Shown one piece after another: positions 10,337-64,000 of a DNA stretch of 64,000 bases. Within the stretch, counting starts at the first letter, position 1. The number at the start of each line of letters is the position of its first letter. The DNA is from Octopus sinensis (Eukaryota). Below the pieces are notes generated by a model. It did no database searches. It saw only the letters and a list, made by a program, of their open reading frames with translations, and was not told where the DNA came from. The stretch lies in assembly GCF_006345805.1 (NCBI RefSeq), contig NC_043000.1:102734001-102798000 (forward strand). Reading direction: 5' to 3'. The position numbers and the translations under genes were made by a program.

Positions 10337-10337
<1 letters not shown>

Positions 10338-10426: not shown

Positions 10427-10428
<2 letters not shown>

Positions 10429-13400: not shown

Positions 13401-13436
13401 AGGTGGATTCTAGTTAAACAATTTGGTTGATCGTTC

Positions 13437-14535: not shown

Positions 14536-14537
14536 TT

Positions 14538-15403: not shown

Positions 15404-16763
15404 CTCTTTCAAGCTGAGTGGTACAAATAAAGTATCACTTATTTGTACCAGTTTAATGAGTGGTGGTATATAATTCGTACCGAAACTTAAAATTCTTTTC
15501 GCTGCATGGTCGGTAGCTCAGAAAACGCACCACTTCAACTATCAGCCAATCAGAGGCTACCCTTACATCTGGCAACAATTTCTGCGATACAAACGGAATA
15601 TTTGTTCAGTTGAACCCATTTTGTGCCAAAGGTGAGTCGACGAAAAAACAAGAATAAAAATTTTTGTTATAAATTTGTTTATTGAAGTGAAGGTAAGAAG
15701 TTTTTTTTAATATATATTTTGCTTATTAAATGTATTTAGCATAATTATAGGTAAATTATTGAAATTTGAACGTTTATATTTAGTTAAGTTGGTGGTACGT
15801 TGTTAGAGCTACTGAGCAGCCAAATAAACAAACACGTGTTCGTGCAATGAAGAGTTGATTTAGGATTGAAGAATTAATATGTATTTTTTATACTTTTATA
15901 CAATATAAACGTTTGTATGAAATTGAAAAGGGTGAAATTTCCTCAATCTTATAAGAATGACAAAGACTTGGAAAGAGGTGAACATGACTGGTTTATTTCT
16001 GATGATGGGATTTCGGCTAAGAGAGTGATATATGCTACTTCAACTTTTCACGATCCCACTGAAATATGCCAAGTTTCAAGGTGAGGAAAGCTCCAAATAA
16101 ACTGTCCACTTATGATAAAGGATTACAACTTAAATATTAATTGTGTAGATAAGTTTTACCAGCTAAAGAAAATCTATGAAATAGACCTTAAAAGTCACAA
16201 ATGGTGACACAGAATACTTTTTACTTTCTTGATGCAGCAATTGTAAACGCTATCATACTTCATAAGAAGTACAGGACAGCAATGTGACACTGAAAAGCAT
16301 TCAGATTGGAAGTTATTGATGGCTTAGCAGCAGAATCTATTGTACTAAAGAGAAAGACAAAAGGGCTTTCAGTATAAAGGGCGAGAGCCTCATGCTTTAG
16401 AGATTAGAAAGAGTCGGATCAATAAGAGGAACTAGAAGGAGGCGTGCTTTGTGCAGTTCAAAAGCTAGACAAATCAGAACAGAGTGTAAATGTTCTATTT
16501 GCGAAGTTCCTCTCTGTCTTGTTAAAAAGAAGCAATGTTTCCAAGATTATCACAAATAAAGGTGTACCTATTGTTTGGTGGTACAAATTTTAGACCACCT
16601 CCACTAAGTCAAAGTTATATATATATTTTGTAATTTCCAACTAGAAACGCTTAATTTAATTAATAATAAAGGACAAATTTATGTGTGGTCAATATAAGGT
16701 CAATGAATAAATTTTTGCCCTTCTAGATTTTTTTTTAGCCTATCTATCTCGCCCCTGAAAGAC
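15404..16763 (+). mobile_element. Internally deleted piggyBac-type DNA transposon
   Basis: TTAA at 15400-15403 and 16764-16767. Short TIRs are CTCTTTCA and GTCTTTCA. Remnants include IKDYN..CVDK, FLDAAIVNA and a Cys-rich C-terminus (CSICEVPLCL..CFQDYH). Confidence 0.85.
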
Positions 16764-17131
16764 TTAAAGCTTTTAACTTTCTAAGCTCTAGATCTGAAAG
16801 TTTCACAAAATACCAGGACTTTGACAAGCACTTTGAAACACTGGAACTCGTTGTCATCACTAGACTATGCTATAATCCTTATGATCACACGCAACCCATC
16901 GGATTTTTACCCTCCTATTCCGTACATCTGAACTCTTCATACTTTTAAATTCATAAATAAATGTATATATGGGTTTAATATGCGTGTATTCCTATAAATA
17001 TCTATGTATGTGTTCATGTTCCTATACATACAAAATATATTAACAAATAGTATTGAATTAACCTTAACTCCACAAATAATTAACATTCTTGATTTCCTTT
17101 CACGCTTTTTACTGTCATATTTTAATTTCGT

Positions 17132-22869: not shown

Positions 22870-23850
22870 TTGTATATGAATAAATGAAAAGAATGGAGTC
22901 GAACGAAGATGTTAACAAAATTCCTTTACTCTCGACACATGTTTCGAAGACAGCATATTTTCATTCCGAAGGAATAAAGAGTGCATTATGCAATCTTCTC
23001 ATCAGGACAGTAAGGGAGCCTCTCTCGACAACAAGACAAACAAAAAATTTCGATGATTGCCTACATGGTAAACAGAGCGATAATGAGTGGTTTTTTTTTA
23101 ATCCGTTAGGAGAATTGACGTCAAAAATGTAGGGGACAGTATGTTTGCTGTATGTATGGAAATATGTGGGTGTGTGCTTGTGTTAATGAGTGCGTGTGAT
23201 TGTGTGTATGTGTGTGTATAACTGTATTTGTGTCTGTGTGTGTGAGAGAGAGACAGACGTCAAAGATAGATAGTAGTAAGGGAAGGCTTAGGAAAGAATT
23301 TCTCTATAGCAGTGGGGTGGACGTGAAGCTTATTGTTCAAACCACAGTGACAACCGTTATCATTTATATGAGTAGAAAGTGTGTTTCTGCCAGTGTTTAC
23401 ATTTGTACGATTTTTCTATGAGTGTGTTTACTAGGGGAACCTTAGCGAAAAGAATATGGAAGAGTTCAGAGTTACAAATGTTACAAAATCTCCTGCCCTT
23501 ATTAAAAGGAAAGGATACAGACAATATGAACCAATCTAACTTGAAAATTATATTATTGTCTTTAAGACGCCAAACTAATTTACTTAGCCCTGTACTATGT
23601 CGTTTTTTCCTATCCCTGAATGTCGAATAGTGGTTAGAAATTCTCTTGGATAACTGAGAAGTGGACGCTCCTATATAAAAGAAAACGTCGGTACCGGAAG
23701 AAATTCTACACTGGTAAATGGAATTCTTAATCTTAGAAATAGTGTAGTGTTTAGCGCTAATAATAATAGAAACAACAATCATAACAATAAAAACTTCGTC
23801 TCGATCTCGGAGGACAACCCTAACAGAATTAATTTTTTGTCTAGTAATTC
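22870..23850 (-). mobile_element. Penelope-like 3' portion with GIY-YIG endonuclease ORF (23360-23782) and 3'UTR
   Basis: SIYQC..FFYIGAST..KRISNH..LSKLVWRLKD..CNICNSE is a GIY-YIG domain with the PLE C-terminal Cys motif. Confidence 0.85.
22923..23015 (-). ncRNA. Type I hammerhead ribozyme motif
   Basis: ttactgtc-CTGATGA-gaaga..tcttc-GAAA-c(atgt)g-TC-gagagtaa. Confidence 0.7.
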
Positions 23851-24211
23851 TAAGATTAAGAATTCCATTTACCAGTGTAGAATTTCTTCCGGTACCGACG
23901 TTTTCTTTTATATAGGAGCGTCCACTTCTCAGTTATCCATACTTTCCCAAAAATTAAAATTCACATTTTTTAATGGCTAGTATGCTTTTTTTTCTATCAC
24001 GCTACAGTCACTACTACTATGCTTTTTAATAATACTCTATATTAAATACGAACTAATATTTTTCATACGCATGGCGTCTCTGAATATATTATTCTCTAAG
24101 GAATTCTGATTTTCTACGCTACCAGGGTACAGTTTTGTACATTCATTTATTCAACCTTCTTCGGCAAATACGAAGAGAGTTATCTTTCGTTGATGAAATC
24201 ATATGTCCGAA

Positions 24212-25077
24212 CTAGAATTTCTTCCGGTACCGACGTTTTCTTTTATATAGGAGCGTCCACTTCTCAGTTATCCAAGAGAATTTCTAACCACTATTCGACA
24301 TTCAGGGATAGGAAAAAAACGACATAGTACAGGGCTAAGTAAATTAGTTTGGCGTCTTAAAGACAATAATATAATTTTCAAGTTAGATTGGTTCATATTG
24401 TCTGTATCCTTTCCTTTTAATAAGGGCAGGAGATTTTGTAACATTTGTAACTCTGAACTCTTCCATATTCTTTTCGCTAAGGTTCCCCTAGTAAACACAC
24501 TCATAGAAAAATCGTACAAATGTAAACACTGGCAGAAACACACTTTCTACTCATATAAATGATAACGGTTGTCACTGTGGTTTGAACAATAAGCTTCACG
24601 TCCACCCCACTGCTATAGAGTATTTTTGATGTCTGTCTCTCTCTCACACACACAATCACACACACAGACACAAATACAGTTATACACACACACATACATA
24701 CATACACACACAAACACACGCACTCATTAACACAAGCACACACCCACACATTTCCATACGTACAGCAAACATACTGTCCCCTAGCCATTATTACTTTATC
24801 CCTTTCCTTCCTCCTACTATCCATTTTTGACGTCAATTCTCCTAACGGATTTTTTAAAAAAAACACTCATTATCGCTCTGTTTACCATGTAGGCAATCAT
24901 CGAAATTTTTTGTTTGTCTTGTTGTCGAGAGAGGCTCCCTTTCTTTCCTGATGAGAAGATTGCATAATGCACCCTTTATTCCTTCGGAATGAAAATATGC
25001 TGTCTTCGAAACATGTGTCGAGAGTAAAGGAATTTTGTTAACATCTTCGTTCGACTCCATTCTTTCATTTATTCATA
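24212..25077 (+). mobile_element. Inverted second copy of the Penelope 3' portion
   Basis: Reverse complement of about 22870-23705, with several indels. Confidence 0.9.
24938..25030 (+). ncRNA. Type I hammerhead ribozyme motif
   Basis: CTGATGA at 24948-24954, stem II gaaga/tcttc, GAAA at 25008-25011 and GUC at 25017-25019. Stem I is ctttc/gagag plus ccttt/aaagg. Confidence 0.75.
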
Positions 25078-34774: not shown

Positions 34775-35190
34775 TCTTTTACTCTTTACTCTTTTACTTG
34801 TTTCAGTCATTTGACTGCGGCCATGCTGGAGCACCACCTTTAGTCGAGCAAATCGACCCCGGGACTTATTCTTTGTAAGCCCAGTACTTATTCTATCGGT
34901 CTCTTTTGCCGAACCGCAAAGTGACGGGGACGTAAACACACCAGCATCGGTTGTCAAGCAATGCTGGGGGACAAACACAGACACACAAACATATACACAC
35001 ACACTTATATATATATATACATATATACGACAGGCTTCTTTCAGTTTCCGTCTACCAAATCCACTCACAAGGCATTGGTCGGCCCAGGGCTATAGCAGAA
35101 GACACTTGCCCAAGATGCCACGCAGTGGGACTGAACCCGGAACCATGTGGTTGGTTAGCAAGCTACTTACCACACAGCCACTCCTGCGCC
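34775..35190 (-). mobile_element. SINE family A, full-length
   Basis: Matches consensus, CpGs largely intact. Confidence 0.9.
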
Positions 35191-35914
35191 TAATTGTTGT
35201 TTTCCGTATGGATGCCATTTTTGAATTTGGAAATAATTCCGTTTTTGTCTGCCAAACAGCGCAAACAGTTGTATATTTACTTAATAGCTAACTCTTTCAA
35301 AAAGCAAGAGTCGTTAGTCCGTGCTTTGCTGATGAGGTCGTGTGCGTAAGCATAATTGTAAACAACATTAATTGTAAACAAATGCCACCGTAAATCAAAG
35401 CATGCTCGTTCGTTTGCAAGACTAGGAGAAATATTACCTAGGTTGAATGGTAAAGGCTGGCAACAGGAAAGGCATCCGGCCGTAAAAAATCTGCCCCAAC
35501 GAATTTTCTCAGATCCATTCAACCATTGGAAAAGTAGACGTTAAAACGAAAATGTTGGTCAGTATTGCTGATATGGTCATGTTCATAAGTATATATGTAT
35601 ATTTGTTATTGTAAACAACTTTAATTAAAAAAAACAAAACACGCACTGTGAATCAAAGCAGTGTCATTGGTTTTGCAAGACTGGGAAAGATTACCTTGCC
35701 TGAGAAGTGGAGGTTGGCAACATGAAGAACACCATCATTGTAAATTCGCCTCAAAAGATTTCGTCTGACACATGAAAGCACAGAAAAGTAGACGTTAAAT
35801 CGAAAATATCGGTCAATAACCAATATTGCCTTTTCCTCACCGCAAAGTTATTTTCAGTTTGAATTTAAATGTTCCTTGCATTAAATATGTCAAACACTCT
35901 AATTCAGTTATTAT

Positions 35915-36134
35915 ATACTCTTTTACTCTTTTACTTGTTTCAGCCATTTGATTGCGGCCATGCTGGAGCACCACCTTTAGTCGAGCAACTCGACCCCGGG
36001 ACTTATTCTTTGTAAGCCCAGTACTTATTCTATCGGTCTCTTATGCCGAACCGCAAAGTGACGGGGACATAAACACACCAGCATCGGTTGTCAAGCGATG
36101 TTGGGGGGACAAACACGACACACAAACATACACG

Positions 36135-36170
<36 letters not shown>

Positions 36171-36341
36171 CATATATACGATGGGCTTCTTTCAGTTTTC
36201 CGTCCACCAAATCCACTCACAAGGCTTTGGTCGGCCCAAGGCTATAGTAGAAGACACTTGCCCAAGGTGCCACGAAGTGGGACTGAACCTGGAACCATGT
36301 GGTTGGTAAGCAAGCTACTTACCACACAGCCACTCCTGTGC
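35915..36341 (-). mobile_element. SINE family A, full-length
   Basis: Matches consensus, CpGs largely intact. Confidence 0.9.
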
Positions 36342-37815
36342 CTACTATACACTATATTTGAAAATATTAGCCTGCAGCTTTGCCTGAGGAAACATGTATG
36401 CAGAATCCTAAGTTCTATAACAACATTATATCGTTTATCTTGTTTCAGTCATTGGAATGCGACCATGGTGGTGGCACATCTTTCAAGGGATTTGTTGAAT
36501 AAATCAATCCCGGTACTTGTTTTTAATCTGGTACTTATTCTATTGGAACAAAATCGTCTCCACTGTTCGGTTTTTGATCCTAACTTTGACCCTCCATAAA
36601 TCACAAATTTTATTTTGGTACTTATAGGAGCAACTGTTTTCCATGACTCATATTGTCGTTCAATGCTCGAAATGAGGAGCAAATAGACATTCAACAACTG
36701 ATGAAGGGTCGTTCTTTATGTTACTTGTCCTGTTTTCCATTTGTATCTCTCGTTGTTTGCGTATTGAACCCATTTGTTTTCGCATTAAATTTTGTTTACT
36801 GTTGATGACGCCCTGTACCCATATATGCATGTGTATGTATATATATATATATATATATATATGTACATATGTATATGTATGTGTATATATATGTATATAC
36901 ATTATTTATATTATTATTTGATTGAACGCTACATGCATCCATTTCCAAGTATATATACACACACGCATATATAGATTAACTGAAATGTATAGTATTAAAT
37001 ATCCATCACAGCTGATCTTACCAACTGGTTTCGGGTAAAGAGTACAATGGAGTGTTAGGTAACAGACTGGTTATATAACTTTACACTCATCAGAGTTAGC
37101 CAATATTGAAGGGTGTAATATATATGTGAATGGCATCTTTCAGTTTGACACTTATCTATGGTGCTAAGCAGTGGGACTGAACTCAAAACCATATGGTTGG
37201 GAAGCAAACTTCATTTCACAGAGAAATAAAAACTTCCTTTATTCTAGAAATAACAAAGAAAGTGAAAATCCAGACGACAAAAGGATATCATCACCATCAT
37301 CCTTTAATGTCTGCTTTCCACACTGACATGTGATGGGTGGTTTGACTGAGAATTGGTAAGCCGGAGAGCTGCAGCAGGTTCCAGGTTGATTTGGCATGTT
37401 TTCTACAGCTGGATTCCCTTCCTAATGTCAACCACATTCGAGGGTGTACGGGGTGTTTTTAATGTGCCACTGGCATGTCATATATATTTATTTATATGAA
37501 ATGAAGAAAAAGCTCATGATTAAGAAAATTTTCCGTAAATTTTAATGCAAATGAGAAAGGAAAAAATATTTCGCTGAGTTTGACAGAAATTTTGAATGTA
37601 TTATTTTCTTGTCTTTTGATGATAAGTATTTGTGTTATGACACAATAGGTTACATGTTATTTACCAAATATCAATTTTTAGGTCACAGATGATATGATTA
37701 ACAAAAAAAATTCATTATAGCATTCGGTATGTATTTCTTGTAAAAATATACACACATTGTCATTATATATATGTACATATACATTATGTACATACATATA
37801 TATAAGATATATACA

Positions 37816-37839
<24 letters not shown>

Positions 37840-37859
<20 letters not shown>

Positions 37860-38147
37860 TTATATATATGTATAAATACATATATGTATGAATACATATA
37901 TGTACATATGAATACATATATGTACATATGTATATATATATATATGCATATATATATATGTACATATGTATATATATATGTGTGTGTGTATGAGGTGAAG
38001 CAAATAAAGTTTGTATTAGAAAATGTGTACAAGATCAGTGAAAAGCACCAAGTTTTGATTCCAAGAAAGGTAAAGAAAAGCAATGATTTGAGATAAAAAT
38101 ACCCACATACACACACACAGATATATATACACATATATAAATATATA

Positions 38148-38195
<48 letters not shown>

Positions 38196-38807
38196 TACAT
38201 ATATATATATATGATATATAAAAATACCTCATTAACCCAACAATGAAGACCAAAATAAGCACTGTGTATGGGGTAGGTGGGTTTGTGGGTAGAAATGGTG
38301 GATGTGGGTAGGTATAGTCAGGAAGGGTGGAGAAAAACAATCTGTTGGGCAATGGAATTTAGGTGGGGGATTGTCAAAAGCCAAAAGCACCAAATGTTAA
38401 CCATTATGTCAGGTCTTTTATTTCTGGTTTTGTATGTAGGTACGTGCGCGTGCGCACACACACACACACACGGATATATATGTATATATATATATATATA
38501 TAATATATATATATATATATGTATTATATATATGTATAAATACATATATGTATGAATACATATATGTACTATGAATACATATATGTACATATGTATATAT
38601 ATATATATGCATATATATATATGTACATATGTATATATATATGTGTGTGTGTATGAGGTGAAGCAAATAAAGTTGTATTAGAAAATGTGTACAAGATCAG
38701 TGAAAAGCACCAAGTTTTGATTCCAAGAAAGGTAAAGAAAAGCAATGATTTGAGATAAAAATACCCACATACACACACACAGATATATACACATATATAA
38801 ATATATA

Positions 38808-39822: not shown

Positions 39823-40149
39823 TGACAGACACACACACACACAGACACACACACATGTATAGATGTTTAAAATAAACAAAAAAAAATGAGGGGGCTGTAG
39901 GTGTGGAGGGAAAAAAGGAAGAAAAAAGAAATTAAAATTAGAGTTGGTAGAGACAAACTCACATATATACCAGACTAACGCAGAAACATATGTAAGTCAC
40001 ACTACTATGCATCTGCGTCATACAAAAATTGTTGTTTTGTAGCTTTTGTATTTCTAAAAAAATCTAAACAAGAAATCTCTGAGAAATCTATATATACATA
40101 TACATATACATACAAACAAACAAATATATATATATGTATATATATATAA

Positions 40150-40240
<91 letters not shown>

Positions 40241-40379
40241 TATATACATATATATATATATGTACATATACATATATATATATATACCTGTATATATACA
40301 CACGCACACACATATACATACATTACATACATATATATATATCATCATCATCATCATCATATATATATATACATATAAG

Positions 40380-40433
<54 letters not shown>

Positions 40434-40739
40434 CGCATATGTCCATGTACATATTTATCAAATTAAGCACACAACTGAAAGAGCTACTAATAGTTTCATG
40501 CTATTATGATACTTGAGCAGGCATATTTATAAAACATACCATGTATCTTAAACCAATCTTTAAAGCTCTGTTTATGTGTTATATATAATTCTTGAATATG
40601 TACATATTTAAATATATTATTATACAATTTTATATAGAGGTTGTTAACTTTAACAATACTCAGAAACAGGCTAGAATTGAAGTGCTCAAATTGAGCTAAG
40701 TTCCAATTTATAATTTGAATGGAGGCAAGATATTTAAAT

Positions 40740-49425: not shown

Positions 49426-50084
49426 GGATGCATTATGTATATACATATATTTTAATCGGCAGGAGTTACTCAAAGGCCCTTGATCCAATACAAAGTGACT
49501 CAAGGATTACTGAGTCATTTTCTAACATTTGCTAGGGAGGTCATCTGGATATACAAAACCTACCATACAAATAGTGGTACACATATGTAAATACATTTTT
49601 TTCGGTAGGCACAGGTATGGCTGTGTGGTTAGGGAGCTTGCTTCCCAACCACATGGTTTCAGGTTCAGTCCCACAACATGGCACCTTCGGCAAGTTTCTG
49701 TCGTGTGTGTACATGTGTGTATAAGTCCTTGTGCCTCCTAACAGAGAGGAGGGGAAAATACATAAATTCATGATTTGTGTTCTATTTATCTAGTTTATAG
49801 TAACAAATCTATCTGTCTATCTATACATTATACACATGGACACACACACATCTCTGTTTGTGCATGTTTGTGTGTGTCTGTATGTACATGCACATGCAGG
49901 AGTGGCTGTGTAGTTAAGAAGTTTGTTTCACACGGTTCCAGATACAGTGTTAGTGTGCCATTGTGGATGAATGTCTTTTACTATAGTCGTTCAAAGCTTT
50001 GTGAATAGATTTGCTAGGTGAAAACTCAGAAAAAGTCAGTGAGTGTGTGCACGTATGCATGTATGTATGCATGCATGTATATAT

Positions 50085-50840
50085 CTTTTACTTGTTTCAG
50101 TCATTTGACTGCAGCCATGCTGGGGCACCACCTTTAGTCGAGCAAATTGACCCCAGGACGTATTGTTTGTAAGCTTAGTACTTATTTTATCGGTCTTTTT
50201 TGCCAAACCGCTAAGTTACGGGGATGTAAACACACCAATGTCAGTTATCAAGTGATGGTGGGGTACAAATAGACACATAAACATATACATACTCTTTTAC
50301 TTGTTTCAGTCATATGACTGCGGCCATGCTGGAGCACCGCCTTTAATCGAGTAACTCGACCCCGAGACTTATTCTTTTGTTAGCCCAGTACTTATTCTAT
50401 TGGTCTCTTTTACCGAACCGCTAAGTAACTGGGACATAAACACACCAGCATCGGTTGTCAAGCACAGACACACAAACGCATATATATATATACATATATA
50501 CGCCGGACTTCTTTCAGTTTCCGTCTACCAAATCCACTCACAAAGCTTTGGTCGGCCCGAGGCTATAGTAGAAGACACTTGCCCAAGGTGCCACGCAGTG
50601 GGACTGAACCCGGAACCGTGTGGTTGGTAAACAAGCTACTTACCACACAGCCACTCCTGCGCATATATATATATATATACACAACAGGCTTATTTCAGTT
50701 TCCGTCTACCAAATCCACTCACAATACTTTGGTCAGCCCAAGCCTATAGAAGAAACTTGCCCAAGGTGGCATGTAGTGGGACAGAACCCAGAACCATGTG
50801 GTTGGTTAGCAAGCTACTTATCACATACCCACTCCTGTGT
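50085..50840 (-). mobile_element. Tandem cluster of SINE family A: 3' half, near-full copy (50290-50660), 5' half
   Basis: All in the same orientation. The middle copy retains CpGs while the flanking halves are more decayed. Confidence 0.85.
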
Positions 50841-54042: not shown

Positions 54043-54214
54043 TGCATACATACTCATATATGTATATATATATATATACACATACATGTATGAGCATATA
54101 TATATGTATGTATATATATACATACATATATACACTCATATATGTAATATATATATATATATATTATATATATATATATACACATAAATATGCACATACA
54201 TACACACATGTATC

Positions 54215-54280
<66 letters not shown>

Positions 54281-54409
54281 GACAACAAAAGAATGAAAGA
54301 GACCTCAATATTATGTAAATAGAGGAATTTATCTGTATACATATATATATATATATATATACATGTCTTTTTATATATACACATGCACATACATATATAT
54401 ATCTGTATG

Positions 54410-54441
<32 letters not shown>

Positions 54442-54722
54442 TATATACATACATATACATATATCAACTGTTCATTCATACATACAACACACCACATATG
54501 CAGCTAACTTTTTTTATTATTCAATTTTTTTTTTCTTTCAAAGGCACATTATTATCATCATCATCATCATTATTATTATCATCATTATTATTATTATTAT
54601 TATAATTATAATTAATATTATTATTATTATTCCAAAAGACCTGAGAGGTGAATGAGATAGATATAAAACAGAAAAACGCTCAAATAGCTTTGGCTTTTAG
54701 TTTTATAGCTTTGGAAAAATTG

Positions 54723-54999
54723 TTAGTGTTTCAGAGTCAAGCCAGATCTCACTGACGATGAAGATGGAGATTCATTTGCTTCGGTCAAATGTTCAGATAA
54801 TCTAGAAACTGGGCTCTGTCTGGCTGAAGAAGTGGGAGGTGGTGTGCTACTGTGGGCGCTGATTACATTTGAGGAACTCTGTGAAGGAAGCTGATGTGAT
54901 TGCTGTGACGAAGATGATGACGATGATGGCGAGAGATGAGGGCTTGGATTGTCATTATTACAGTTGTTACTATTATTATTACTACCTCCACTATTACTG

Positions 55000-55035
<36 letters not shown>

Positions 55036-55559
55036 ATAATAGTACAACTGCCACTACTACTTGTGTTATTATTGTTGGTGTTATTATTATCATTATTATT
55101 GTTATTACTACTATTGTTATTGTTATTATTATTATTTGAACAACTGGTAAAGTTTGAACCAGCTCCACTAATGGAAGAAGCACCAATAAATGTGCTTGAT
55201 GTAATGATTGGAGAATTCGGTGAGTGCTGAGCAGTTGTTGACATTAATTCAGTTTGTTGCTGGTGTTGCTGTTGCTGTTGTTGTTGTTGCTGTTGCTGCT
55301 GCTGTTGTTGTTGTGGCTGCTGCTGTCCTGTCTGAACAGAAAGCTGGTTATTGGTGGGTGTGGTAGACCGAGCCTGTGCTTGCGCCTGAGCCTGTGCTTG
55401 AGCCCACTTTGGTAAAATCCTTCGTCGTGCATTGGTGAACCAGTAGTTGATCTGATTGATAGTCAGACCGGTTTGCTTTATAAGCATGGCCTTCTCGTCA
55501 TCATTGGGATAAGGGTTATCTTTATGATTTCGTAGCCATTCTAGCATTATTGCCACAGC
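54723..55559 (-). CDS. TALE-class homeobox gene, terminal coding exon (most of the homeodomain plus low-complexity C-terminus)
   Basis: Acceptor ctttattgtag|[55 protein letters not shown] contains the PYP loop and WFxNARRR. TAA at 54725-54723. Confidence 0.95.
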
Positions 55560-57935
55560 CTACAATAAAGGAGAATAGCAATAAAATCAGTTATCAATCA
55601 TGGAAAATATTAAGAAAATGAAATAATTATATATATATAAAAAATAAAATAAACCCTAGAATTTACACATACAGAAAACTGCATTATGAGGCACTAACAG
55701 TGCACATATCAAAGATACACAATACTGCATTACACTCAGTTCTGCTGTGAATGTATGCAATAAACATAACTGAAATAAATATTTCTAACATGGGCACAAG
55801 GCCAGAAATCTGGGGAGAGCGGTTCAACTCCAGTACTTCATGGTACTTTATATTAAAAACTGTGGAAGGATGAAAGAGACAGTTGACTTTATAGGGATTA
55901 GAACTCAAACAAACACCACGAGGTATTTATTTATAGGTGCTTTAACAATTCTGTCAATCATCCCTCATTATGATAACTAAGAACTGCTGGTGGCACAAAA
56001 AAGGTACCAAGTACATGCTTTGAAACGGTTGGCATTAAGAAGGGCATCCAACTGTAGAAACCATGCCAAAGCAGACACGAGAGCATGATGCAGTTCTTGA
56101 ATCCATCAGATCCTTGTCAAACCAGCCAACTCATACCACCATGGAACATGGACGGATGCTAAATGATGATGAAAAATGATATTGTAACCTAGGCACGAAG
56201 CCAGAAATTTAGAAGAGAACACATTTGATCACTGCACTTAACTGGTAACTATGTTATCAACATTGGAAGGATGGAAGGAACAGATGACATCAGAAAGAAA
56301 TGAACCCAGAATGTAAAGTAATGTAATGAATGGAAACCACAAGTGAAATAGGTGGTGATAGGATCGACTATCAAGCTGTAGGAATCATGTCTAAAAAAAC
56401 TAAATAACGGAGAAGTGAACTCCATAAGCCACACTGTAATAGATAATGAAAAGGCCAGCATATCCAAATAAAATCTTATACAATGTAGTGAGGAGTGATT
56501 CAGCTTTTCCACTGAGGAATCATCTAATCCTTGTGAAGTGGAAGAGACCTTTTGAAACTCGTCCAATCAAAGCAAGCTAAGGAAAAACAAATGTGAAAAT
56601 GATAGCAATCGTTGTGATATTTTCTTCACCACAATTCCAATTTAGCTAATCTGCCACCCTTTTTATGCTACAAATACAGTATTTTTCTGTATTTTAAAAA
56701 AATCTTTAGTAATAATAATTTAGGCACAAGGGACAAGAATTTTGGTGGGGAGGAGAACTTTTTTTTTCATTGACCCTTGGAAGGATAAAGGTAAATCCTG
56801 ATCTGGATTTGAACTAAAATGGAACAAATATTGTAAGGTGTTTTGTCCAATATTCTAACACTTCTTCCAATCCACAGCATAAAAAAAAAAGCTCATTTGA
56901 TGTCTGTTCTTCCATTAGTTGAAGACTGAGCCATTATTTTGCAATTGGATTTTTACTCGTCACTAAAACTTTTTTTTTTTTACTTTTAAAGGATTTTTAT
57001 TCTGCTTGTCTTAGAATAAGCAGAAATTTGGGGGCAATATGCTGACAGGGTGATTTCCCACACACATGCCAGGGCAAATGGCTTCTATACTGGGACTGAA
57101 CCTGGAACCATGTGGTTGTTTAAACAAACTTCTTAACTGCACAGCCATGCATAATGATGATTAGTATAGGCCAGAAATTTGAGGTAGCTGCAACAGTTGA
57201 TTATCCTGAGTACAGTACTTGATAGGTACTTTATTCTATTGACACCTGGTAGGATTTGTACAATAAGAACTGGAACAAATACTTGGAAGTATCCAATCCA
57301 ATGCCATTACCACATATTTTCAAAGAAAAAATTGTCAATCTCACAAGTAGGTGAAAATATGTTATGATACTTGCATGTAAAATTATTTTAATTTTGGTAA
57401 TTTGTACAAATTTTAATTTCTTTTTTACCCTTTCCGAACACTTCACCTGAAATTTTTCTATAACAAGGTCTAAAGAAATTTGGATGCTTTCTCATGAATG
57501 TGGAGGCAATGTATAAGTGTTTAGCATCATCCAATTCTACCATACAAAAGATATATTGCTATTTATTCAACTATATACACACATACAGTTATATATATTT
57601 ATACACACAAATAGCATTCCAAGACTACCAAATTTCTTTGATTGAGTTATCATTATTCCCATTAGCTGTTAAATAAACAGGTGTATACCTCAATTACACT
57701 AGGTATTCATGAGAGATGGCATGAGCTCAACAGGTGCAGTTTCCACTTAGCATTGGCAACTGATGGATGTAGATGATGGAGATATTTACACACACACACA
57801 CACAACAATATTAGATTCACGAATGAGTCAACTGCTAGTTGTTTATATAACACCTCTCTGTCCTTTATCTAAGATATTTATTTCTGTATGTTCCATATTG
57901 ATAAAGAATCCAATAGAACTATTTATGTGACATAC

Positions 57936-58046
57936 CTCTTTAGGCAAACTAGGATGTTTCTTTGATTCTGATTTGGCACTATGGTTACTGCTACTGCTTA
58001 CAACACTACCAGTGTCACTCATGCTGTCTGGTTGCTCTTTTAAAAC
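57936..58046 (-). CDS. TALE homeobox gene, internal coding exon (N-terminal arm, ..SKKHPSLPKE)
   Basis: Acceptor tcttttgtag and donor GAG|gtatgt. 111 nt, phase 0-0, joining in frame to give LPKE|AVAIM. Confidence 0.9.
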
Positions 58047-59767
58047 CTACAAAAGACAGAGAAAAAAAACAACATTTATATGAAAACAAACAGCCAGATA
58101 GCATGCTTTAGGTGAACTACTTTTTAGTCAGAGTTAAATTCAAATCAAAAGAAAGAAGTAAAACATTAATTACTAATTAAAGTTTACCATTGATTTGTGG
58201 CCAAGGCAACTTAAAAATAAACAATTCCAGCCATGGCAAATCTTGAGAATACTTAAGTTTCAGAGAAGGAGGTGCAGGCATACAAAATTTGTTTTCCTTG
58301 GAATCACTCACTGCTTAAGGTCTGATTAGAATATTAATCATGAATAAACTAACCCAACCCATAATGGATAAAAAAAAATTGTTTGTATTGCAAAAACTCT
58401 TGTATAGAGGGAGTGGATGGTCAAATTAAGAAATGAGAAATTCACTACACTGACCCAGTAATTATAACAACAGACAATTCTTCTTGGCTATGCTATCATT
58501 CAGCCAAACAATATTGTTGTAGATAGATAGATAGAAGCTAACTTTTGCGAAACTAAAAATAGTAAATGACAGACAAGTAAGATATGAAGCCAAATTGTGT
58601 AGAAATAAAAATAAAATGTAGAAAAAATAAAAAATAAAAAAAATATAAAAAGCCATTTTTTTTTTCTCATTTACTTCTCAAAATCAAAGAAACTGAACAG
58701 AAATACAAAACCCCAAAGTCCAGTACCATGAAACCATAATTAACAAAATAACAAACTTAAACATAAAACATGTTTTTCCAGATGTAAAGCATCCATTAAT
58801 GGTTTTTATTTAATAACTAAGACTAAGGAAACCAGGAAATGGCCATCACCATTTTTAGTGCCACTGAGATTGGTCAGAAGGAGTTCAACCCAAAACCAGT
58901 CACTTAGCATGAACACTTCCAACAAACAGGACTCTGTTTGAGGCATCTGTAAGCCAGTTGATTCAGCAAAACAGAAATGATCCCAAATTTTAACCATAAA
59001 AGTCAACCTGAAGCTATAGAAGAAGACACTTGTCTAAAATGTTAAGTGGTGGGATTGAACCTGAAACCATGTGGTTACAAAGTGAACTTTTAACCATAAA
59101 ACTTTGCTTGCACCATAACAATAATTAATGGTTGCAACTCCCTCACTTTTGTTTTACTGTAAAATTTTACCCAAAGTATTTTAAGCTACTCCATGGTGGT
59201 ACTCCAGCATGACCATGGTCACATGGCTGAAATGAGTAAAAGAGTATAAAATAGTAGGTTCTTTAGAATTTAAATTAATGTTTATGTCCCCTACCCACCC
59301 ATAATTACCAGCTACAGAATAATCTTTTACTTGGTTTATAAAAAAAAGCATTATAGTCTTTCTGAGTTCAAATTCTGCCGAGGTCAGCTTTGACTTTCAT
59401 CCTTTTAGGTGAGCACTGGGGGTCAATGTAACTGACTTACTCCCTTCTCTGAAATTGCTGACCTTGTGCCAAAATTTGAAACTATGATTATCATTATTAT
59501 AATGATTATTATTACTATTATTATTTTAAGGTGGCAAACTGGGAGAATCATTAGCACACTGGGCAAAGTGATTAGCATTATTCCACCTGTCACTGCATTC
59601 TGAGTTCAAATTCTGCAAAGGCCGGCTCTGCCTTTCATCCTTTTGGACTCGGCAAATTAAGTACCAGTGAAACACTGGGGTCGATGCAATCAACTAGTCC
59701 CCTCCCCCAAATTTCAGGCCTTGTGCCTATGGTAGAAAGGATTATTATTATTATTATTATTACATAC

Positions 59768-59893
59768 CTCTAAAGGTAAACGAGGGCCTTTTGTTGGGTC
59801 TGTCAAGAAAGCATTTCTGCAGAAAACCTGGTTACCACATGGTTGACCACTACTAGCTGAATTACCATGGATACAAGCTCCAGGATCCATTGA
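59768..59893 (-). CDS. TALE homeobox gene, probable first coding exon (ATG at 59890)
   Basis: Acceptor cttcctttctag and donor GAG|gtatgt. 126 nt open in phase 0: SMDPGACIHG..RLPLE. Confidence 0.75.
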
Positions 59894-59997
59894 CTAGAAA
59901 GGAAGTAATGAGAGAGAATATTTAAAACCAAAGTCTAAGTAACCAATTTCCAATAGCTCCCATGTTTCCTTGCTATCTTTGTGGAATACATATACAA

Positions 59998-60029
<32 letters not shown>

Positions 60030-60489
60030 TATTCCTCAAATATTCACAACGATTCACTGGATAACAAGCAACATTTCAATTTTAGTCCTAAAGCAAATGA
60101 GATATTTTCAAACTTTAAAATCGCTCTTTTCATTAATGCATATATTCTAAAAGAATGGAGCTAAATATATAATAAATTATTTTACTGGAAAAACATATAT
60201 TAAGGCACAAAAATATTTTTAAGTCAAACATTTCGGACACCACTGATTATACTTGTAATAATATTGGTTTCAAATTTTGGCACAGGGTCTGCAATTTCTG
60301 AGAAGCGTGTAAGGTGATTGCATTGGCCACAGTACTCAAAGGATGAAAGGCAAACTTCAACATTGGCAGAATTTGAACTCAGAATGTAAAGACAGGTGAA
60401 ATGCCACTAAGCATTATACCTGGCATGCTAATAATTTTACCAGCTCACCACCTTAATCATATTCATAACATTAAACAGCATTCTTTTTT

Positions 60490-60701
60490 TCTTATTCTTT
60501 TATTCTTTAACTTGCTTCCGTCATTTGACTGTGGCCATGCTGGAGCACCACATTTAGTTAGACAAATCGACCCCAGGACTTAAACTATTGGTCTCTTTTG
60601 CTGGACCGCTAAGTGACGGGACGTAAACACACCAACATCAGTTGTCATACGATGGTGGTGGTGGTGGTGGTGGTGGGGACAAACAGATACAAATAACAAA
60701 G

Positions 60702-60736
<35 letters not shown>

Positions 60737-60868
60737 CGACGGACTTCTTTCAGTTTTCGCCTACCAAATCCACTCACAAGACACTTGCCCAAGGTGCCAT
60801 GCAGTGGGGTTGAACCTGGAACCATGTGGTTGGGAAGCAAGCTTCTTACCACACAGCCACTCCTGCAT
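60490..60868 (-). mobile_element. SINE family A in intron
   Basis: Consensus with deletions. Confidence 0.85.
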
Positions 60869-61185
60869 GGCTAAAATACATTTAGGAGAGGGTACAATCA
60901 ATTCTGTCAACCTTGGAAGAATGAAAGCTAAATTTGACTCCAGTGGGATTTAAACCAAAACCATTAACGGATGTAACTAAATATCACCTGTCGACTGCTC
61001 TACTAATTCTGGCTTTTACCACTTTTATGTTAGATATAGTATTAACCCTTTTGATACGAACCCCCTGAGACTGCCCCACTATGTAGAGACCCCTTCCTTG
61101 ACTTGTCAGTTATTCGATACAATACATATGCAAATAGACACATATATCTGTCATAAGGTAATGTTTCTCTAGTGCAAGCAGCTAC

Positions 61186-61251
61186 CTATAGAAGACTGTA
61201 CCCCGGGTTGGCAGTTTTCAGATTTGAAGAGAGGCTTTCAAATGAAAACAC
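61186..61251 (-). other. Candidate 5'UTR exon of the TALE gene
   Basis: Very long polypyrimidine tract ending cttaag|GTG. Donor TAG|gtagct, with an alternative donor at 61201. Confidence 0.45.
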
Positions 61252-61624
61252 CTTAAGATAAATAAAGAAAGCAAGATAGAAATGAAGACAGAGAGGTAAG
61301 GAAGAGAGTGTAAAATATTAAGTTGCCGAATATTAATTATATCCTGATATAAGTTTCAGTAATTTTATCTTTCAAGTCTATTTAGGTATCTTACTGGTAG
61401 GTGTAACATATATAGGAGAGCTGTTGCTAAAACAATTTCAACAGTAGCCTTAGGATATTTCCTGGGGCAATGAGAGAAGGGAGGAAAGGATAGATAGAGG
61501 AGAGGAAATGAGAGGGAGAAAAGGAAAGGTTGTGTGTGTGTGTGTGTGCGCGCGCGCTTGTGTATATGTTAGGCAGTTTGAATTTGTAAGGCCAGGTTGA
61601 TTCTTGATTTCTCTCTTTACATAC

Positions 61625-61713
61625 TCTCCTTCTTCATAGTTGCCTGCAATCTTTTCTGATGGCAGACAATAAGTAATGAAGCCTACCATGATGACTTCCT
61701 TTGGCACACTCAA
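61625..61713 (-). other. Candidate 5'UTR exon of the TALE gene with uORF start (ATG 61689)
   Basis: Acceptor ctttatgtag and donor AGA|gtatgt. In-frame TGA upstream of the main ATG. Confidence 0.45.
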
Positions 61714-61980
61714 CTACATAAAGACAAAAGCCTTCAGTAATTAGCCACCCAGTGGCCCATTAAAGATGATTACCAGATGTTTTCCATATCTCACACACAC
61801 ACACAAATAACAACCATTGTACATCCTTTCCCAATGATTGTATGGGTGAAATAGTTTACTGGTTTGAACATTTGTGTTTCTTTTCCCCTCTACAGCTGAA
61901 TGCTGCTCTTCCTACTGCTAACCACTGAACTGTGAAGTGGGCTGTTTTTATTTATTTATCCTCAACATCAACATCATCAT

Positions 61981-62011
<31 letters not shown>

Positions 62012-62679
62012 AGCAGCCAAGCAAACTACATTAAGCAGTAAACAGCTATTAGGTATCTGGCTTAGGTGTACAAAACAAGACAATTGCAATATCCTAAACT
62101 TCTGGCTACTGGTTTAGTGGGCTAACACTTTTAACCTCACAGTCAAATATAGATGCTCTTACATTAATTACCCTTTCAAGTCATTTTTCACAAAGCTCTT
62201 TAGTTTTAATTATGCAAATTCCTCTATGATAGAAATGTACTAAATAATTTTTGAATACATAAAAGTTTAAAAATTGATCTGGAGGCAAGTTACAATTAAA
62301 CTAATATGATGAGGTCAAATTCATACTGAAACACAGTGTCCCTAATTGTCCCTAGTCTCTAAACAAATAGCAGACTTTTCTTTTGTTTCCCAAGTATGCT
62401 CATCCAATTAAGAATATATTTTTGATATCTTCAAATTCCCTCCCTTCCTACTTTCAGCACTGCTAATGATTACTGCTGGAGGCCGTAGCCCAGCATATCA
62501 TACCATTTTGGAATCAGGCCAACTCTGTGAGTAAATTAAAAACATTCCAGACCGAATCTGGACCTATAATCCTGAAATTCTGGATACCCAAGTTTTCCTA
62601 ACTTGGAAATAAATTTTGAGAATAATTGAAATTAATTGCAAAATCCAGCGATTATTTTCTGCAATTTTTTTTACTTAAT

Positions 62680-62775
62680 TTTTTTGTGACGAATATGACC
62701 ATCATTGGGATATGATTCTGGAGGAAGCAATTGCAACAAATTCTCCAAAACAAGTCAGAGATCTGTTTGCAGAAC
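62680..62775 (+). mobile_element. Short Helitron RepHel coding remnant
   Basis: DHHWDMILEEAIATNSPKQVRDLFA resembles the Helitron W..TLEEA..SP.QLR.LFA motif. Confidence 0.6.
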
Positions 62776-64000
62776 TTCACATTTGGGTTCAGTAACTTAG
62801 AAGCTGCACCATCGGGTGGTTGAAGTTTTGCGTATCAAATTAAGCAGAAGTTTGTGTCATTTGGTCCCTATGCATGTTTCACTATTGTGGTTATTGTAAC
62901 CTCTGCATTGCAATTGCATGCAAAATGACAACAGATCATCAGGGGAACACTTTGTTGCACTATGTTACGCAGATCCAAAGCTTATATGTGTGTGTGCAAT
63001 ATGTGTCTGTAATTGTGTTTCTCTCAGCTTGATAACCAGTATGTTAGTAAAAAGGAGCTAAGTCAATAATAAGTGCTAGACTTAAAAATTTGGGTTCAAT
63101 TTGAGTAAGTAAAACCTTCAAAGCAGTGCTCCAGCATGGAAACAATTCAATGAATGAAACAAGTAAAAGAGTATTAACACACACACACACATTTATATAT
63201 AGCTTCTATATAAGCCAGCAAAAATTAATTAAGTGAAATTAATACACAACAAAAGATAATTACTTCTCTGTTAAAGAAAAAAAAAAAAGAAACTAAGAAA
63301 AATCTGCCAATCTCTGTCAATAAATAGTTATTTAGACTGACTTGGGCCATAAAATACCTTAATATAGATAATAAAAAAAATCCTAATGTGGGGGAGAATG
63401 GTGGCGGGGTAGTCTTCATTACACAAAACTAAAATCCATTAATTTATGTGCAATGATAAGGAAAACAGCAGAACCATGCTGATAAAGTTACAAGGACTGG
63501 ATATATATATATATATACATACACACACTAGAACTTATGCTTGTACCAAAATTACTCCCATGGGTCTTTAATAAAAAAAAGAAGAAAAAATGAAGTGGGA
63601 GGAGGAGGAACCAATAAGGGTTAGCAAAAGAATTCAGCTGGCAGAGTAAGGAAAATGTAGTTTATTCCTTTTCCTGATTATACAATTCTAGCCATAGTCA
63701 TGTTGGCTTTGCCATGCAGCTAAGTTTTGCGTATCAAATTTCAAGAACTCCTGTTCAGTATATTGCCTTGTTAACTAGTTGGCAGCAGTATCGGACCCTC
63801 TCTCTGTTACATGGGTTGCCAGAGATAAAACATGAACAACAAAAGCCAGCGTCAACAGTTAAACACACAAATACATACACATACACACAAACATACGCAA
63901 CATAGCACAAAGCAAAGCATAGAATAATGAGTCGATGAAGAAAGTTCTATGTGTTCTCAGGGCCAGCTAGAAATACCAGCTAAATCACATTAAAATCACA

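What the first reader, a model, noticed from the sequence alone, without database searches (positions are those of the whole stretch)
54723..59890. Divergent TALE homeodomain with Y47/T50 and no N-terminal-arm arginines
Seen: reconstructed HD SKKHPSLPKE|[52 protein letters not shown], with a phase-0 intron after LPKE. Known: TGIF/MEIS/PKNOX have N47/I50, PBX has G50, IRX/MKX have A50, and lineage-specific TALE expansions exist in spiralians. It looks TGIF-like ([12 protein letters not shown]) but differs at DNA-contact positions. Inference: a lineage-specific TALE with altered specificity rather than canonical TGIF.
Basis: partly seen in the sequence, partly recalled or inferred. Interest (0 to 1): 0.7.

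Follow-up and report, generated by a model that had tools for sequence, protein, structure and literature searches.

The report
Cephalopod TALE-I homeobox gene, 3′ end
These are the last three coding exons of a cephalopod copy of TALE-I, a homeobox family that is already catalogued but functionally unstudied; the gene is an ordinary member, though the family looks older and more MEIS-like than the published surveys say.

Summary
On the minus strand, an exon ending ...ESKKHPSLPKE (58046-57936) is joined by a phase-0 GT-AG intron to an exon starting AVAIMLEWL... (55559). Together they encode an intact TALE homeodomain with Y47, T50 and H5.

It is not new. The homeodomain is 62/63 identical to oyster Cgi_TALE2, the founder of "TALE Clade I" (Paps 2015), also called "TALE-I" (Barton-Owen 2018). 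It falls inside that clade (87% bootstrap), apart from Tgif. Y47/T50 is the family signature, seen in 76 of 87 retrieved homeodomains.

A Sepia esculenta mRNA encodes a 1,315-aa orthologue, and the window holds only its last three coding exons.

Three points go beyond the surveys I read:
- The proteins are about 1,100-1,300 aa long.
- They carry a ~120-aa domain before the homeodomain that resembles the MEIS/PKNOX (MEINOX) domain at profile level (hhalign 85%, E 6e-6; controls far lower).
- Relatives with this domain occur in Priapulus (Y47/T50 kept), in decapod crustaceans and, without a homeodomain, in amphioxus. The family is therefore probably not lophotrochozoan-specific.

DNA specificity remains untested.

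The parts
59768..59893 (-). Internal coding exon (third from last), phase 0 at both ends: SMDPGACIHGNSASSGQPCGNQVFCRNAFLTDPTKGPRLPLE. It encodes a weakly constrained linker.
   Evidence: tblastn of the Sepia orthologue P0076, residues 1036-1078, E 2e-12. Acceptor ctttctag| and donor |gtatgt. 10 synonymous versus 17 non-synonymous codon differences to Sepia.
58047..59767 (-). Intron (1,721 nt, GT-AG, phase 0) containing SINE-like fragments at 59003-59128 and 59553-59695.
57936..58046 (-). Coding exon (second from last): a Ser-rich linker plus the homeodomain N-terminal arm, positions 1-11 (ESKKHPSLPKE).
   Evidence: blastn to Sepia mRNA L005 3370-3486, 80% identity. 18 synonymous versus 2 non-synonymous codon differences.
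55560..57935 (-). Phase-0 GT-AG intron (2,376 nt) between homeodomain positions 11 and 12. The position is conserved across the family.
   Evidence: The same break (..LPKE | (Q)AV..) is seen in loci L001-L003. It also shows in many read-through gene calls that begin ...Q-AVAIML (P0011-P0016, P0018, P0029, P0045, P0058).
55404..55559 (-). Start of the terminal exon: homeodomain positions 12-60, including the TALE loop KDN, Y47, W48, F49, T50, N51 and R53-R55.
   Evidence: Pfam Homeobox_KN E 2e-18. PDB alignments. 51/52 aa identical to Sepia, with 24 synonymous versus 1 non-synonymous codon differences.
54723..55403 (-). Rest of the terminal exon: a C-terminal tail of ~225 aa (AQ repeats, polyQ, polyN, polyS) and the stop codon TAA at 54725-54723.
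   Evidence: It partly aligns to the Sepia mRNA 3' coding region. Bivalve and gastropod orthologues lack it and end KWAQ(Q)CK(T).

Best explanation
The region holds the last three coding exons of the cephalopod orthologue of TALE-I (TALE Clade I; oyster Cgi_TALE2). This family of TALE-class homeodomain transcription factors is already catalogued but functionally unstudied.

Shown:
- The homeodomain is intact and under strong purifying selection.
- It sits inside the TALE-I clade and outside Tgif.
- Y47/T50 is the family signature.
- The gene is transcribed and spliced this way in a related cephalopod.
- Full-length orthologues are 1,100-1,300 aa long. They have a conserved acidic N-terminal motif, a long low-complexity middle, a conserved ~120-aa domain before the homeodomain (...AFRSHPLFPLLRDL...VESVIMDALRYAHSSLIEKI...AIEEFCEKFD), and the homeodomain near the C-terminus.

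Supported at profile level:
- The pre-homeodomain domain is a divergent MEINOX (MEIS/PKNOX N-terminal) domain.

Inferred mechanism:
- The protein is a sequence-specific DNA-binding factor. Its helix 3 keeps W48, F49, N51 and R53-R54-R55, the set that reads TGACA in TGIF1, so it probably recognises a TGACA-like core.
- Y47 and T50 sit at two of the three primary specificity positions. Together with H5 in place of the minor-groove R5, they would shift flanking-base preference or affinity.
- The MEINOX-like domain suggests heterodimerisation with a PBC/PBX partner.
- In oyster the orthologue is expressed from egg to blastula, which suggests an early developmental role.
For: - Peptides, splice sites and stop codon.
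- Pfam Homeobox_KN E 2e-18.
- 62/63 identity to Cg_LTCI_TALE2, with the same [15 protein letters not shown] in Lottia, Patella, Pinctada, Capitella, Helobdella, Spirobranchus and Platynereis (Lingula has V50).
- NJ tree of 82 TALE homeodomains: window inside TALE-I at 87% bootstrap and in the mollusc subclade at 56%; Tgif is a separate clade at 71%.
- Oyster has a separate Tgif (CGI_10023491) and Cgi_TALE2 (CGI_10008335). TALE1-4 are expressed from egg to blastula.
- Full-length orthologues: Sepia esculenta transcript P0076 (1,315 aa; runs identified through PMC9538352), Biomphalaria XP_013066235.2, Mizuhopecten XP_021362489.1 and Owenia CAH1774614.1.
- The window's exons map to P0076 residues 1036-1166.
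- Homeodomain exon: 24 synonymous versus 1 non-synonymous codon differences to Sepia.
- Y47/T50 in 76 of 87 retrieved homeodomains.
- MEINOX similarity: hhalign gives 85% probability, E 6.3e-6, score 41.2 over 98 collinear columns. The best of 32 reversed or shuffled controls scores 17.0. Reciprocal HMM searches reach 21.6 and 16.4 bits against 1.4 bits for the best decoy.
- TGIF1 reads TGACA through R219-R221 (homeodomain 53-55), and the R167A/R168A arm mutant loses only 2-fold affinity: PMC6158717.
- Positions 47, 50 and 54 are the primary specificity positions: PMC11006913.
Against: - No binding data exist for any TALE-I protein, so the target site and any change in specificity are inference.
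- Pfam's own Meis_PKNOX_N model (PF16493) does not hit TALE-I proteins at E<=1.
- hhalign probability is 85%, not above 95%, and the invariant HPLFPLL heptad contributes much of the signal.
- The MEIS/KNOX-type intron at homeodomain position 48(2/3) (PMC6219170) is absent here, because positions 12-60 lie on one exon.
- The N-terminal ~1,035 residues, including the MEINOX-like domain, are not in the window. Their presence in this species is inferred from Sepia.
- The source organism is not identified. 'Cephalopod' rests on the closest relative (81% nucleotide identity in exons).
Confidence: 0.85

Rival explanations
1. It is the species' single, fast-evolving TGIF orthologue.
For: LPKE and NARRRILP resemble TGIF. 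TGIF1 is among the best PDB matches (E 1.7e-15). UniRef labels the scallop orthologue 'Homeobox protein TGIF2LX'.
Against: PKNOX1 scores slightly better than TGIF1, and MEIS scores nearly the same. The NJ tree separates TALE-I (87%) from Tgif (71%). Crassostrea, Lottia, Patella, Lingula, Spirobranchus and Platynereis each have both a canonical Tgif and a TALE-I. Orthologues carry a MEINOX-like domain, which is not a TGIF feature.
Confidence: 0.02
2. The homeodomain has lost sequence-specific DNA binding (no Arg in the arm, T50, bulky Y47). It would then serve mainly as a protein-interaction module in a large scaffold-like protein.
For: H5 replaces the minor-groove Arg. Paps et al. list I/A/G as the diagnostic position-50 residues in TALE genes, so T50 is non-canonical. 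The TGIF1 homeodomain also binds Smad MH1 (PMC6158717). The amphioxus relative keeps the pre-homeodomain domain but shows no homeodomain within 10 kb.
Against: W48, F49, N51, R53, R54, R55 and Y25-P26 are all retained. The whole helix 3 is invariant from molluscs to Priapulus. The homeodomain exon shows 24 synonymous versus 1 non-synonymous codon differences. In TGIF1, loss of two arm arginines costs only 2-fold affinity, and K3/K4 remain in the arm here.
Confidence: 0.1
3. It is a member of the spiralian SPILE-type expansion of fast-evolving, early cleavage-stage TALE genes.
For: The oyster orthologue shares the egg-to-blastula expression of most novel oyster TALE genes. It was first described in the same surveys.
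Against: The homeodomain clusters with the Meis/Pknox/Tgif group (WF-x-NARRR), not with the SPILE/TALE-II to IV, VIII and XVIII group (WFANKRNR), which sits with Pbx in the tree. The family is slow-evolving and was a single gene in most species surveyed. It has ecdysozoan relatives.
Confidence: 0.03
4. It is a pseudogene or a stray gene fragment in a repeat-rich region.
For: Only the 3' third of the coding sequence is present. The window is full of SINE-like copies and microsatellites.
Against: The reading frame is open across all three exons with canonical splice sites. Substitutions are strongly biased to synonymous. The exon structure is identical to an expressed Sepia mRNA. The missing 5' exons are most simply explained as lying beyond position 64000.
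Confidence: 0.02

Closest known systems
TALE Clade I (Paps et al. 2015, PMC5322547) = TALE-I (Barton-Owen et al. 2018, PMC6118893); type member Crassostrea gigas Cgi_TALE2 (CGI_10008335)
   Same: The homeodomain is 62/63 identical (only N22 versus Q22 differs). It has the same ESKKHPSLPKE arm, the same [15 protein letters not shown] helix 3 and the same intron break after LPKE. It groups inside the clade at 87% bootstrap.
   Different: This is a cephalopod copy, a group the 2018 paper lists as undersampled. It has a ~225-aa polyQ/N/S C-terminal extension, whereas bivalve and gastropod proteins stop 5-7 residues after the homeodomain. The surveys treated only the homeodomain and called the clade trochozoan/lophotrochozoan-specific. 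Here, full-length proteins show a MEINOX-like domain, and relatives appear in Ecdysozoa and amphioxus.
TGIF1/TGIF2 (TALE class, Tgif family; PDB 6FQP)
   Same: It is a 63-aa TALE homeodomain with L8-P9-K10-E11, N51-A52-R53-R54-R55 and ILP after helix 3. It probably recognises a TGACA-type core.
   Different: It has Y47/T50/H5 where TGIF has N47/I50/R5, and HKDNPYP where TGIF has HRYNAYP. It forms a separate clade and coexists with a true Tgif in the same genomes. The protein is large and has a MEINOX-like domain. None of the sequences examined was assigned to Tgif by any test run here.
MEIS and PKNOX/PREP (MEINOX TALE proteins; Pfam PF16493 + PF05920)
   Same: The architecture matches: an HPLFPLL-containing bipartite helical domain N-terminal to a TALE homeodomain with WF-x-NARRR. 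Profile-profile similarity covers both halves of the MEIS/PKNOX homology domain (85%, E 6e-6). PKNOX1 is the best PDB homeodomain match.
   Different: The Pfam MEINOX model does not detect it. It has Y47/T50 instead of N47/I50. The MEIS-type 48(2/3) intron is absent, and an intron at 11/12 is present instead. About 800-1,000 residues lie upstream of the domain. PBX binding is untested.
SPILE and other spiralian TALE expansions (Morino et al. 2017; TALE-II to XIX)
   Same: They were described in the same spiralian surveys. The oyster member shares their early (egg to blastula) expression.
   Different: They have a different helix 3 (WFANKRNR type) and occupy a different part of the tree. Those clades duplicate and diverge rapidly, whereas TALE-I is conserved and was a single gene in most species surveyed.

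Membership tests
TALE-class homeodomain | [quoted passage not shown] | tested here: met
   Homeobox_KN E 2e-18. Gap-free 63-residue alignment with the TGIF1, PKNOX1 and MEIS homeodomains, with loop residues K-D-N.
TALE-class homeodomain | Core residues W48, F49, N51 and R53 | tested here: met
   ...[10 protein letters not shown]... read directly from 55442-55419.
TALE-I / TALE Clade I | Homeodomain groups with Cgi_TALE2, Lgig, Pfuc and Ctel Clade I sequences | tested here: met
   NJ tree with 200 bootstraps: 87% for TALE-I including the window. 62/63 identity to Cg_LTCI_TALE2. This was NJ on 63 columns only; ML or Bayesian analysis was not run.
TALE-I / TALE Clade I | Signature helix 3, [16 protein letters not shown] (Y47, T50) | tested here: met
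   Identical in the window. Present in 76 of 87 retrieved family homeodomains and in all published TALE-I sequences except Lingula, which has V50.
TALE-I / TALE Clade I | Phase-0 intron between homeodomain positions 11 and 12 (my addition, not a published criterion) | tested here: met
   Window, loci L001-L003 and read-through gene calls.
TALE-I / TALE Clade I | Conserved ~120-aa pre-homeodomain domain (AFRSHPLFPLLRDL...EEFCEKFD) (my addition) | not testable with these tools
   The exons lie outside the window; tblastn of P0004 and P0076 finds nothing upstream of 59893. The domain is present in the Sepia orthologue and in Biomphalaria, Mizuhopecten, Owenia and Priapulus.
Tgif | Homeodomain groups in the Tgif clade and has N47/I50 and R5 | tested here: not met
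   It forms a separate clade and has Y47/T50/H5.
Tgif | It is the sole Tgif-like gene of the genome (orthology) | tested here: not met
   Tested in other species only. Oyster, Lottia, Patella, Lingula, Spirobranchus and Platynereis have both Tgif and TALE-I. This could not be checked in the genome the window comes from.
MEIS/PKNOX (MEINOX) | MEIS/PKNOX N-terminal homology domain (Pfam PF16493) | tested here: inconclusive
   Pfam gives no hit at E<=1. Profile-profile comparison gives 85% probability, E 6.3e-6 over 98 columns, and controls score 17.0 or less. Reciprocal HMM scores reach 21.6 and 16.4 bits against 1.4 bits for decoys. All of this was tested on orthologues, not on the window.
MEIS/PKNOX (MEINOX) | Homeodomain with N47/I50 that groups with Meis or Pknox | tested here: not met
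   It has Y47/T50. TALE-I is a separate clade whose relation to Meis, Pknox and Tgif is unresolved.
MEIS/PKNOX (MEINOX) | Intron at homeodomain position 48(2/3) (PMC6219170) | tested here: not met
   Positions 12-60 are encoded on one exon.
SPILE / spiralian TALE expansion | Homeodomain groups with the SPILE clades (helix 3 of the WFANKRNR type) | tested here: not met

The most novel reading that the evidence does not exclude
TALE-I is not a lophotrochozoan novelty. It would be a third ancient MEINOX-type TALE family alongside MEIS and PKNOX, at least protostome-wide and possibly bilaterian. It would be a large protein with a divergent MEINOX domain and a distinctive Y47/T50 recognition helix. 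It is retained in molluscs, annelids, brachiopods, priapulids and (modified) decapods. In amphioxus only the pre-homeodomain domain is found, and the searches here returned no insect, nematode or vertebrate member.
Probability: 0.5. Interest if true: 0.6.

Novelty: new member of a known kind. Interest (0 to 1): 0.35.

Why it matters
The locus itself is an ordinary orthologue of a catalogued family, so the first-stage flag does not point to a new kind of gene. The family is still worth attention for three reasons.
1. It differs from the other TALE families compared here at two of the three primary specificity positions. That difference has been held fixed from molluscs to a priapulid, yet no binding site, partner or phenotype is known for any member.
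2. If the pre-homeodomain domain is a true MEINOX domain, animals outside insects and vertebrates have a third potential PBX-partner family. That bears on how Hox-cofactor networks are wired in spiralians.
3. The published label 'lophotrochozoan-specific novelty', which is used in arguments about new genes and the developmental hourglass, would need revising for this clade.
Public annotations of orthologues are also misleading and could propagate. They include 'trithorax group protein osa', 'TGIF2LX' and 'Meis1-like'.

Tried and rejected
- Looking up the window's own terminal-exon ORF (from the ATG, MLEWL...) in the assembly index found no record. The source species stays unidentified.
- tblastn of gastropod and Sepia full-length proteins found no upstream exons in 59894-64000.
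- Pfam gave no domain other than the homeodomain in eight full-length relatives.
- The PDB holds no solved MEINOX domain and gave no significant match to the pre-homeodomain profile. I therefore did not spend structure prediction or fold search on it.
- From memory I suspected that the shorter relatives (P0139, P0141 and others) might be vertebrate ANHX. The look-up showed they are decapod crustacean proteins. The only ANHX text found says nothing on this, so I dropped the idea.
- No text on amphioxus 'Atale' as a possible counterpart was found in the held supplements. The amphioxus relative shows no TALE homeodomain within 10 kb downstream.
- I looked for published TGIF intron positions to compare with the 11/12 intron and found none. 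Only the MEIS/KNOX 48(2/3) and PBX 44/45 positions were found.
- Contigs carrying P0016 and P0060 come from unnamed ENA assemblies and add no taxonomy. A third cluster look-up added no new named phyla.
- Rfam found nothing in the window.


Full report
**1. What is in the sequence**

SKKHPSLPKE is at 57965-57936, and [52 protein letters not shown] is at 55559-55404. The first exon ends AAAGAG|gtatgt and the second begins ttgtag|GCTGTG, so a phase-0 GT-AG intron of 2,376 nt separates them.

The joined peptide matches Pfam Homeobox_KN at E 2e-18. It aligns without gaps to the 63-residue TALE homeodomains of PKNOX1 (E 9e-16), TGIF1 (1.7e-15) and MEIS1/2 (1.7e-14) in the PDB. In standard numbering the intron falls between positions 11 and 12. 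The arm is E1-S-K-K-H5-P-S-L-P9, and helix 3 reads N46-Y47-W48-F49-T50-N51-A52-R53-R54-R55.

**2. Gene model and correction of the 5' end**

Upstream lies a third exon at 59893-59768, with acceptor ctttctag| and donor |gtatgt. It is not.

A phmmer search of 1.84 billion representative proteins used the region upstream of the homeodomain of a gastropod relative. It showed that this region lies at about residue 830-1170 of proteins 1,000-1,300 aa long. One of these, P0076 (1,315 aa), is encoded on poly-A RNA-seq contigs. The run accessions SRR19578112 and SRR20545808 belong to juvenile Sepia esculenta libraries.

tblastn of P0076 maps only residues 1036-1166 to the window, in exactly the three exons above. 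blastn of the mRNA gives 80-81% identity and the same junctions. The window therefore holds the last three coding exons of a much larger gene, and about 1,035 codons lie beyond position 64000.

Substitutions against Sepia were counted by codon:

| Exon segment | Synonymous | Non-synonymous |
|---|---|---|
| Homeodomain segment of the terminal exon | 24 | 1 |
| Arm exon (58046-57936) | 18 | 2 |
| Linker exon (59893-59768) | 10 | 17 |

This is a functional gene under purifying selection, not a relic. The terminal exon continues into a tail of ~225 aa rich in AQ repeats, polyQ, polyN and polyS, ending at TAA 54725-54723. Bivalve and gastropod orthologues stop 5-7 residues after the homeodomain, so the tail is a cephalopod feature.

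**3. What family it is**

The supplementary alignments of two homeobox surveys contain this homeodomain almost letter for letter. Cg_LTCI_TALE2 reads [63 protein letters not shown] and differs only at position 22.

Paps et al. 2015 named the group 'TALE Clade I', with Trochozoa distribution and 99% support. It contained oyster Cgi_TALE2 (CGI_10008335) and Lottia, Pinctada and Capitella members. Barton-Owen et al. 2018 renamed it TALE-I and added Patella, Lingula, Helobdella, Spirobranchus and Platynereis.

I built a neighbour-joining tree of 82 TALE homeodomains, using their alignment plus the window and my database hits. It places the window inside TALE-I (87% of 200 bootstraps) and in the mollusc subclade (56%). 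Tgif (71%), Meis (99%), Pbx (99%) and Mkx (99%) form their own clades. The SPILE-type spiralian clades sit elsewhere, with Pbx.

The oyster has a separate canonical Tgif (CGI_10023491), and so do Lottia, Patella, Lingula, Spirobranchus and Platynereis. The gene is not new, however. Y47/T50 is the family's signature, found in 76 of the 87 homeodomains I retrieved.

**4. What the surveys did not describe**

*(a) Size and architecture.* Full-length orthologues were named through cluster look-up:
- Biomphalaria glabrata XP_013066235.2 (1,300 aa)
- Mizuhopecten yessoensis XP_021362489.1 (1,181 aa)
- Owenia fusiformis CAH1774614.1 (1,083 aa)
- the Sepia transcript (1,315 aa)

They share an acidic N-terminal motif (LPNELLDEICEDIGMK..MELDF), long low-complexity stretches, and a conserved ~120-aa block before the homeodomain. 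That block reads ...FIxHLIxDxSxAFRSHPLFPLLRDLxIADMNF...LPxDFxxLLQNFLxRNPP...AVESVIMDALRYAHxxLIEKI...AIEEFCEKFD. Pfam annotates only the homeodomain.

*(b) MEINOX-like domain.* The block looked like the bipartite MEIS/PKNOX homology domain, so I tested it. I collected real Meis, Hth and Pknox N-termini, all carrying PF16493, and aligned 18 of them (A2). I aligned 14 pre-homeodomain domains (A3) and ran hhalign.
- The result was 85% probability, E 6.3e-6 and score 41.2 over 98 collinear columns. These pair HPLFPLL with HPLFPLL, AVE-VIMDALRYAH-LI with ELD-LMVQAIQVLRFHLLE, and EEFC-RFD-VR with ELCDNFC-RYISCLK.
- Thirty column-shuffled and two reversed controls reached at most score 17.0 and 23 columns.
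- The MEIS/PKNOX HMM scores family members up to 21.6 bits in the two expected segments. The TALE-I HMM scores Meis and Pknox proteins up to 16.4 bits. The best reversed decoy scores 1.4 bits in both directions.

I read this as good but not conclusive evidence for a divergent MEINOX domain. No MEINOX domain has been solved, so a fold comparison was not possible.

*(c) Distribution.* The same pre-homeodomain domain occurs outside Lophotrochozoa:
- Priapulus caudatus XP_014666189.1 has it, followed by a homeodomain that keeps [11 protein letters not shown].
- Decapod crustaceans have it (Cherax, Panulirus, Penaeus, Procambarus, Petrolisthes). Their homeodomains have Q/H47 and T or I50.
- Branchiostoma floridae XP_035657441.1 has it, but no TALE homeodomain is found within 10 kb downstream.

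On homeodomain alone, Priapulus joins TALE-I at 59% bootstrap and the decapods join at 43%. That support is weak on its own, but the shared flanking domain reinforces it. The 'trochozoan/lophotrochozoan-specific' label is therefore probably wrong for this clade. I found no paper saying so, but my literature access is partial.

**5. How it most likely works**

In the TGIF1-DNA crystal structure the TGACA core is read by Arg219, Arg220 and Arg221, which are homeodomain positions 53-55. Tyr191 and Pro192 (Y25, P26) make water-mediated contacts. Arm arginines enter the minor groove, and mutating two of them costs only about 2-fold in affinity (PMC6158717). All of N51, R53-R55, W48, F49 and Y25-P26 are present here. 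Binding to a TGACA-like core is therefore the default expectation.

Positions 47, 50 and 54 are the primary specificity positions of homeodomains (PMC11006913). Two of the three differ from every canonical TALE family compared: Paps et al. list I/A/G as diagnostic at position 50. These two residues are fixed across phyla. That argues for a distinct, selected binding preference, at the flanks or in half-site spacing, rather than decay.

The MEINOX-like domain suggests heterodimerisation with PBC/PBX proteins, as for MEIS and PKNOX. The oyster orthologue is among the novel TALE genes expressed from egg to blastula, and the Sepia transcript is present in whole juveniles. Everything in this section beyond residue conservation is inference. 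No member of the family has been assayed.

**6. Against and open**
- Pfam's MEINOX model misses the domain.
- The MEIS-type 48(2/3) intron is absent, and a family-specific 11/12 intron is present instead.
- The relation of TALE-I to Meis, Pknox and Tgif is unresolved in my trees.
- The trees are NJ on 63 columns.
- The source species is unknown. The closest relative found is a cuttlefish at 81% nucleotide identity.
- The 5' two-thirds of the gene, and the presence of a separate Tgif, could not be checked in this genome.

**7. Verdict**

The feature is nonetheless an ordinary new member of a published family, and the gene start was mis-assigned.

Two leads came out of the follow-up: the MEINOX-like domain, and relatives in Ecdysozoa and amphioxus. 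These are the only parts that may be new, and they concern the family rather than this locus.

Noticed in passing
window 54726-55403 (-): The cephalopod TALE-I has a C-terminal extension of ~225 aa (AQ repeats, polyQ, polyN, polyS) after the homeodomain. Bivalve and gastropod orthologues end KWAQ(Q)CK(T) 5-7 residues after it. The Sepia orthologue has a shorter, divergent version.
   Followed up: partly
window 22888-25065: A large, nearly perfect nested inverted repeat: arms 23297-23608 / 24314-24625 at 99% and outer arms 22888-23097 / 24856-25065 at 98%. It encloses an ORF (23360-23782, minus strand) with a faint GIY-YIG hit (E 0.009). It may be a Penelope-like or other mobile element.
   Followed up: no
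window 2444-3553 (+): A 369-aa ORF with a zf-RVT domain (E 1e-5). It is probably the C-terminal part of a non-LTR retrotransposon ORF2.
   Followed up: no
window 34785-35200, 35922-36350, 50079-50680, 11141-11600, 1210-1634, 60501-60883; fragments 59003-59128 and 59553-59695: A SINE-like repeat family of ~400 nt with at least 10 copies in both orientations. Two fragments lie inside the TALE-I intron 59767-58047, and one copy lies just upstream of the first exon in the window.
   Followed up: no
window 14464-14935 and many other sites (e.g. 37783-38200, 40088-40466, 54054-54500): Long microsatellite tracts with an 8-nt period and of TA/CA type. They generate spurious '[12 protein letters not shown]' ORFs in every frame.
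   Followed up: no
L004 (Branchiostoma floridae CM022901.1), gene at 10001-16959: Amphioxus LOC118403088 (670 aa) carries the TALE-I-type pre-homeodomain domain but no homeodomain. No TALE homeodomain is detectable within 10 kb downstream. Either the homeodomain was lost or its exon lies farther away.
   Followed up: partly
P0070, P0071/P0170, P0134 (public records): The public names of orthologues and relatives are misleading: 'trithorax group protein osa' (Biomphalaria), 'Homeobox protein TGIF2LX' (Mizuhopecten, UniRef) and 'homeobox protein Meis1-like' (Penaeus).
   Followed up: yes
P0064 (189 aa, Logan assembly, organism unknown): An unrelated TALE-like homeodomain that also has T50 ([15 protein letters not shown]). 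Its helix 1-2 loop is two residues longer (WLLSPEHFTHPYP). It lies outside TALE-I in the tree.
   Followed up: no
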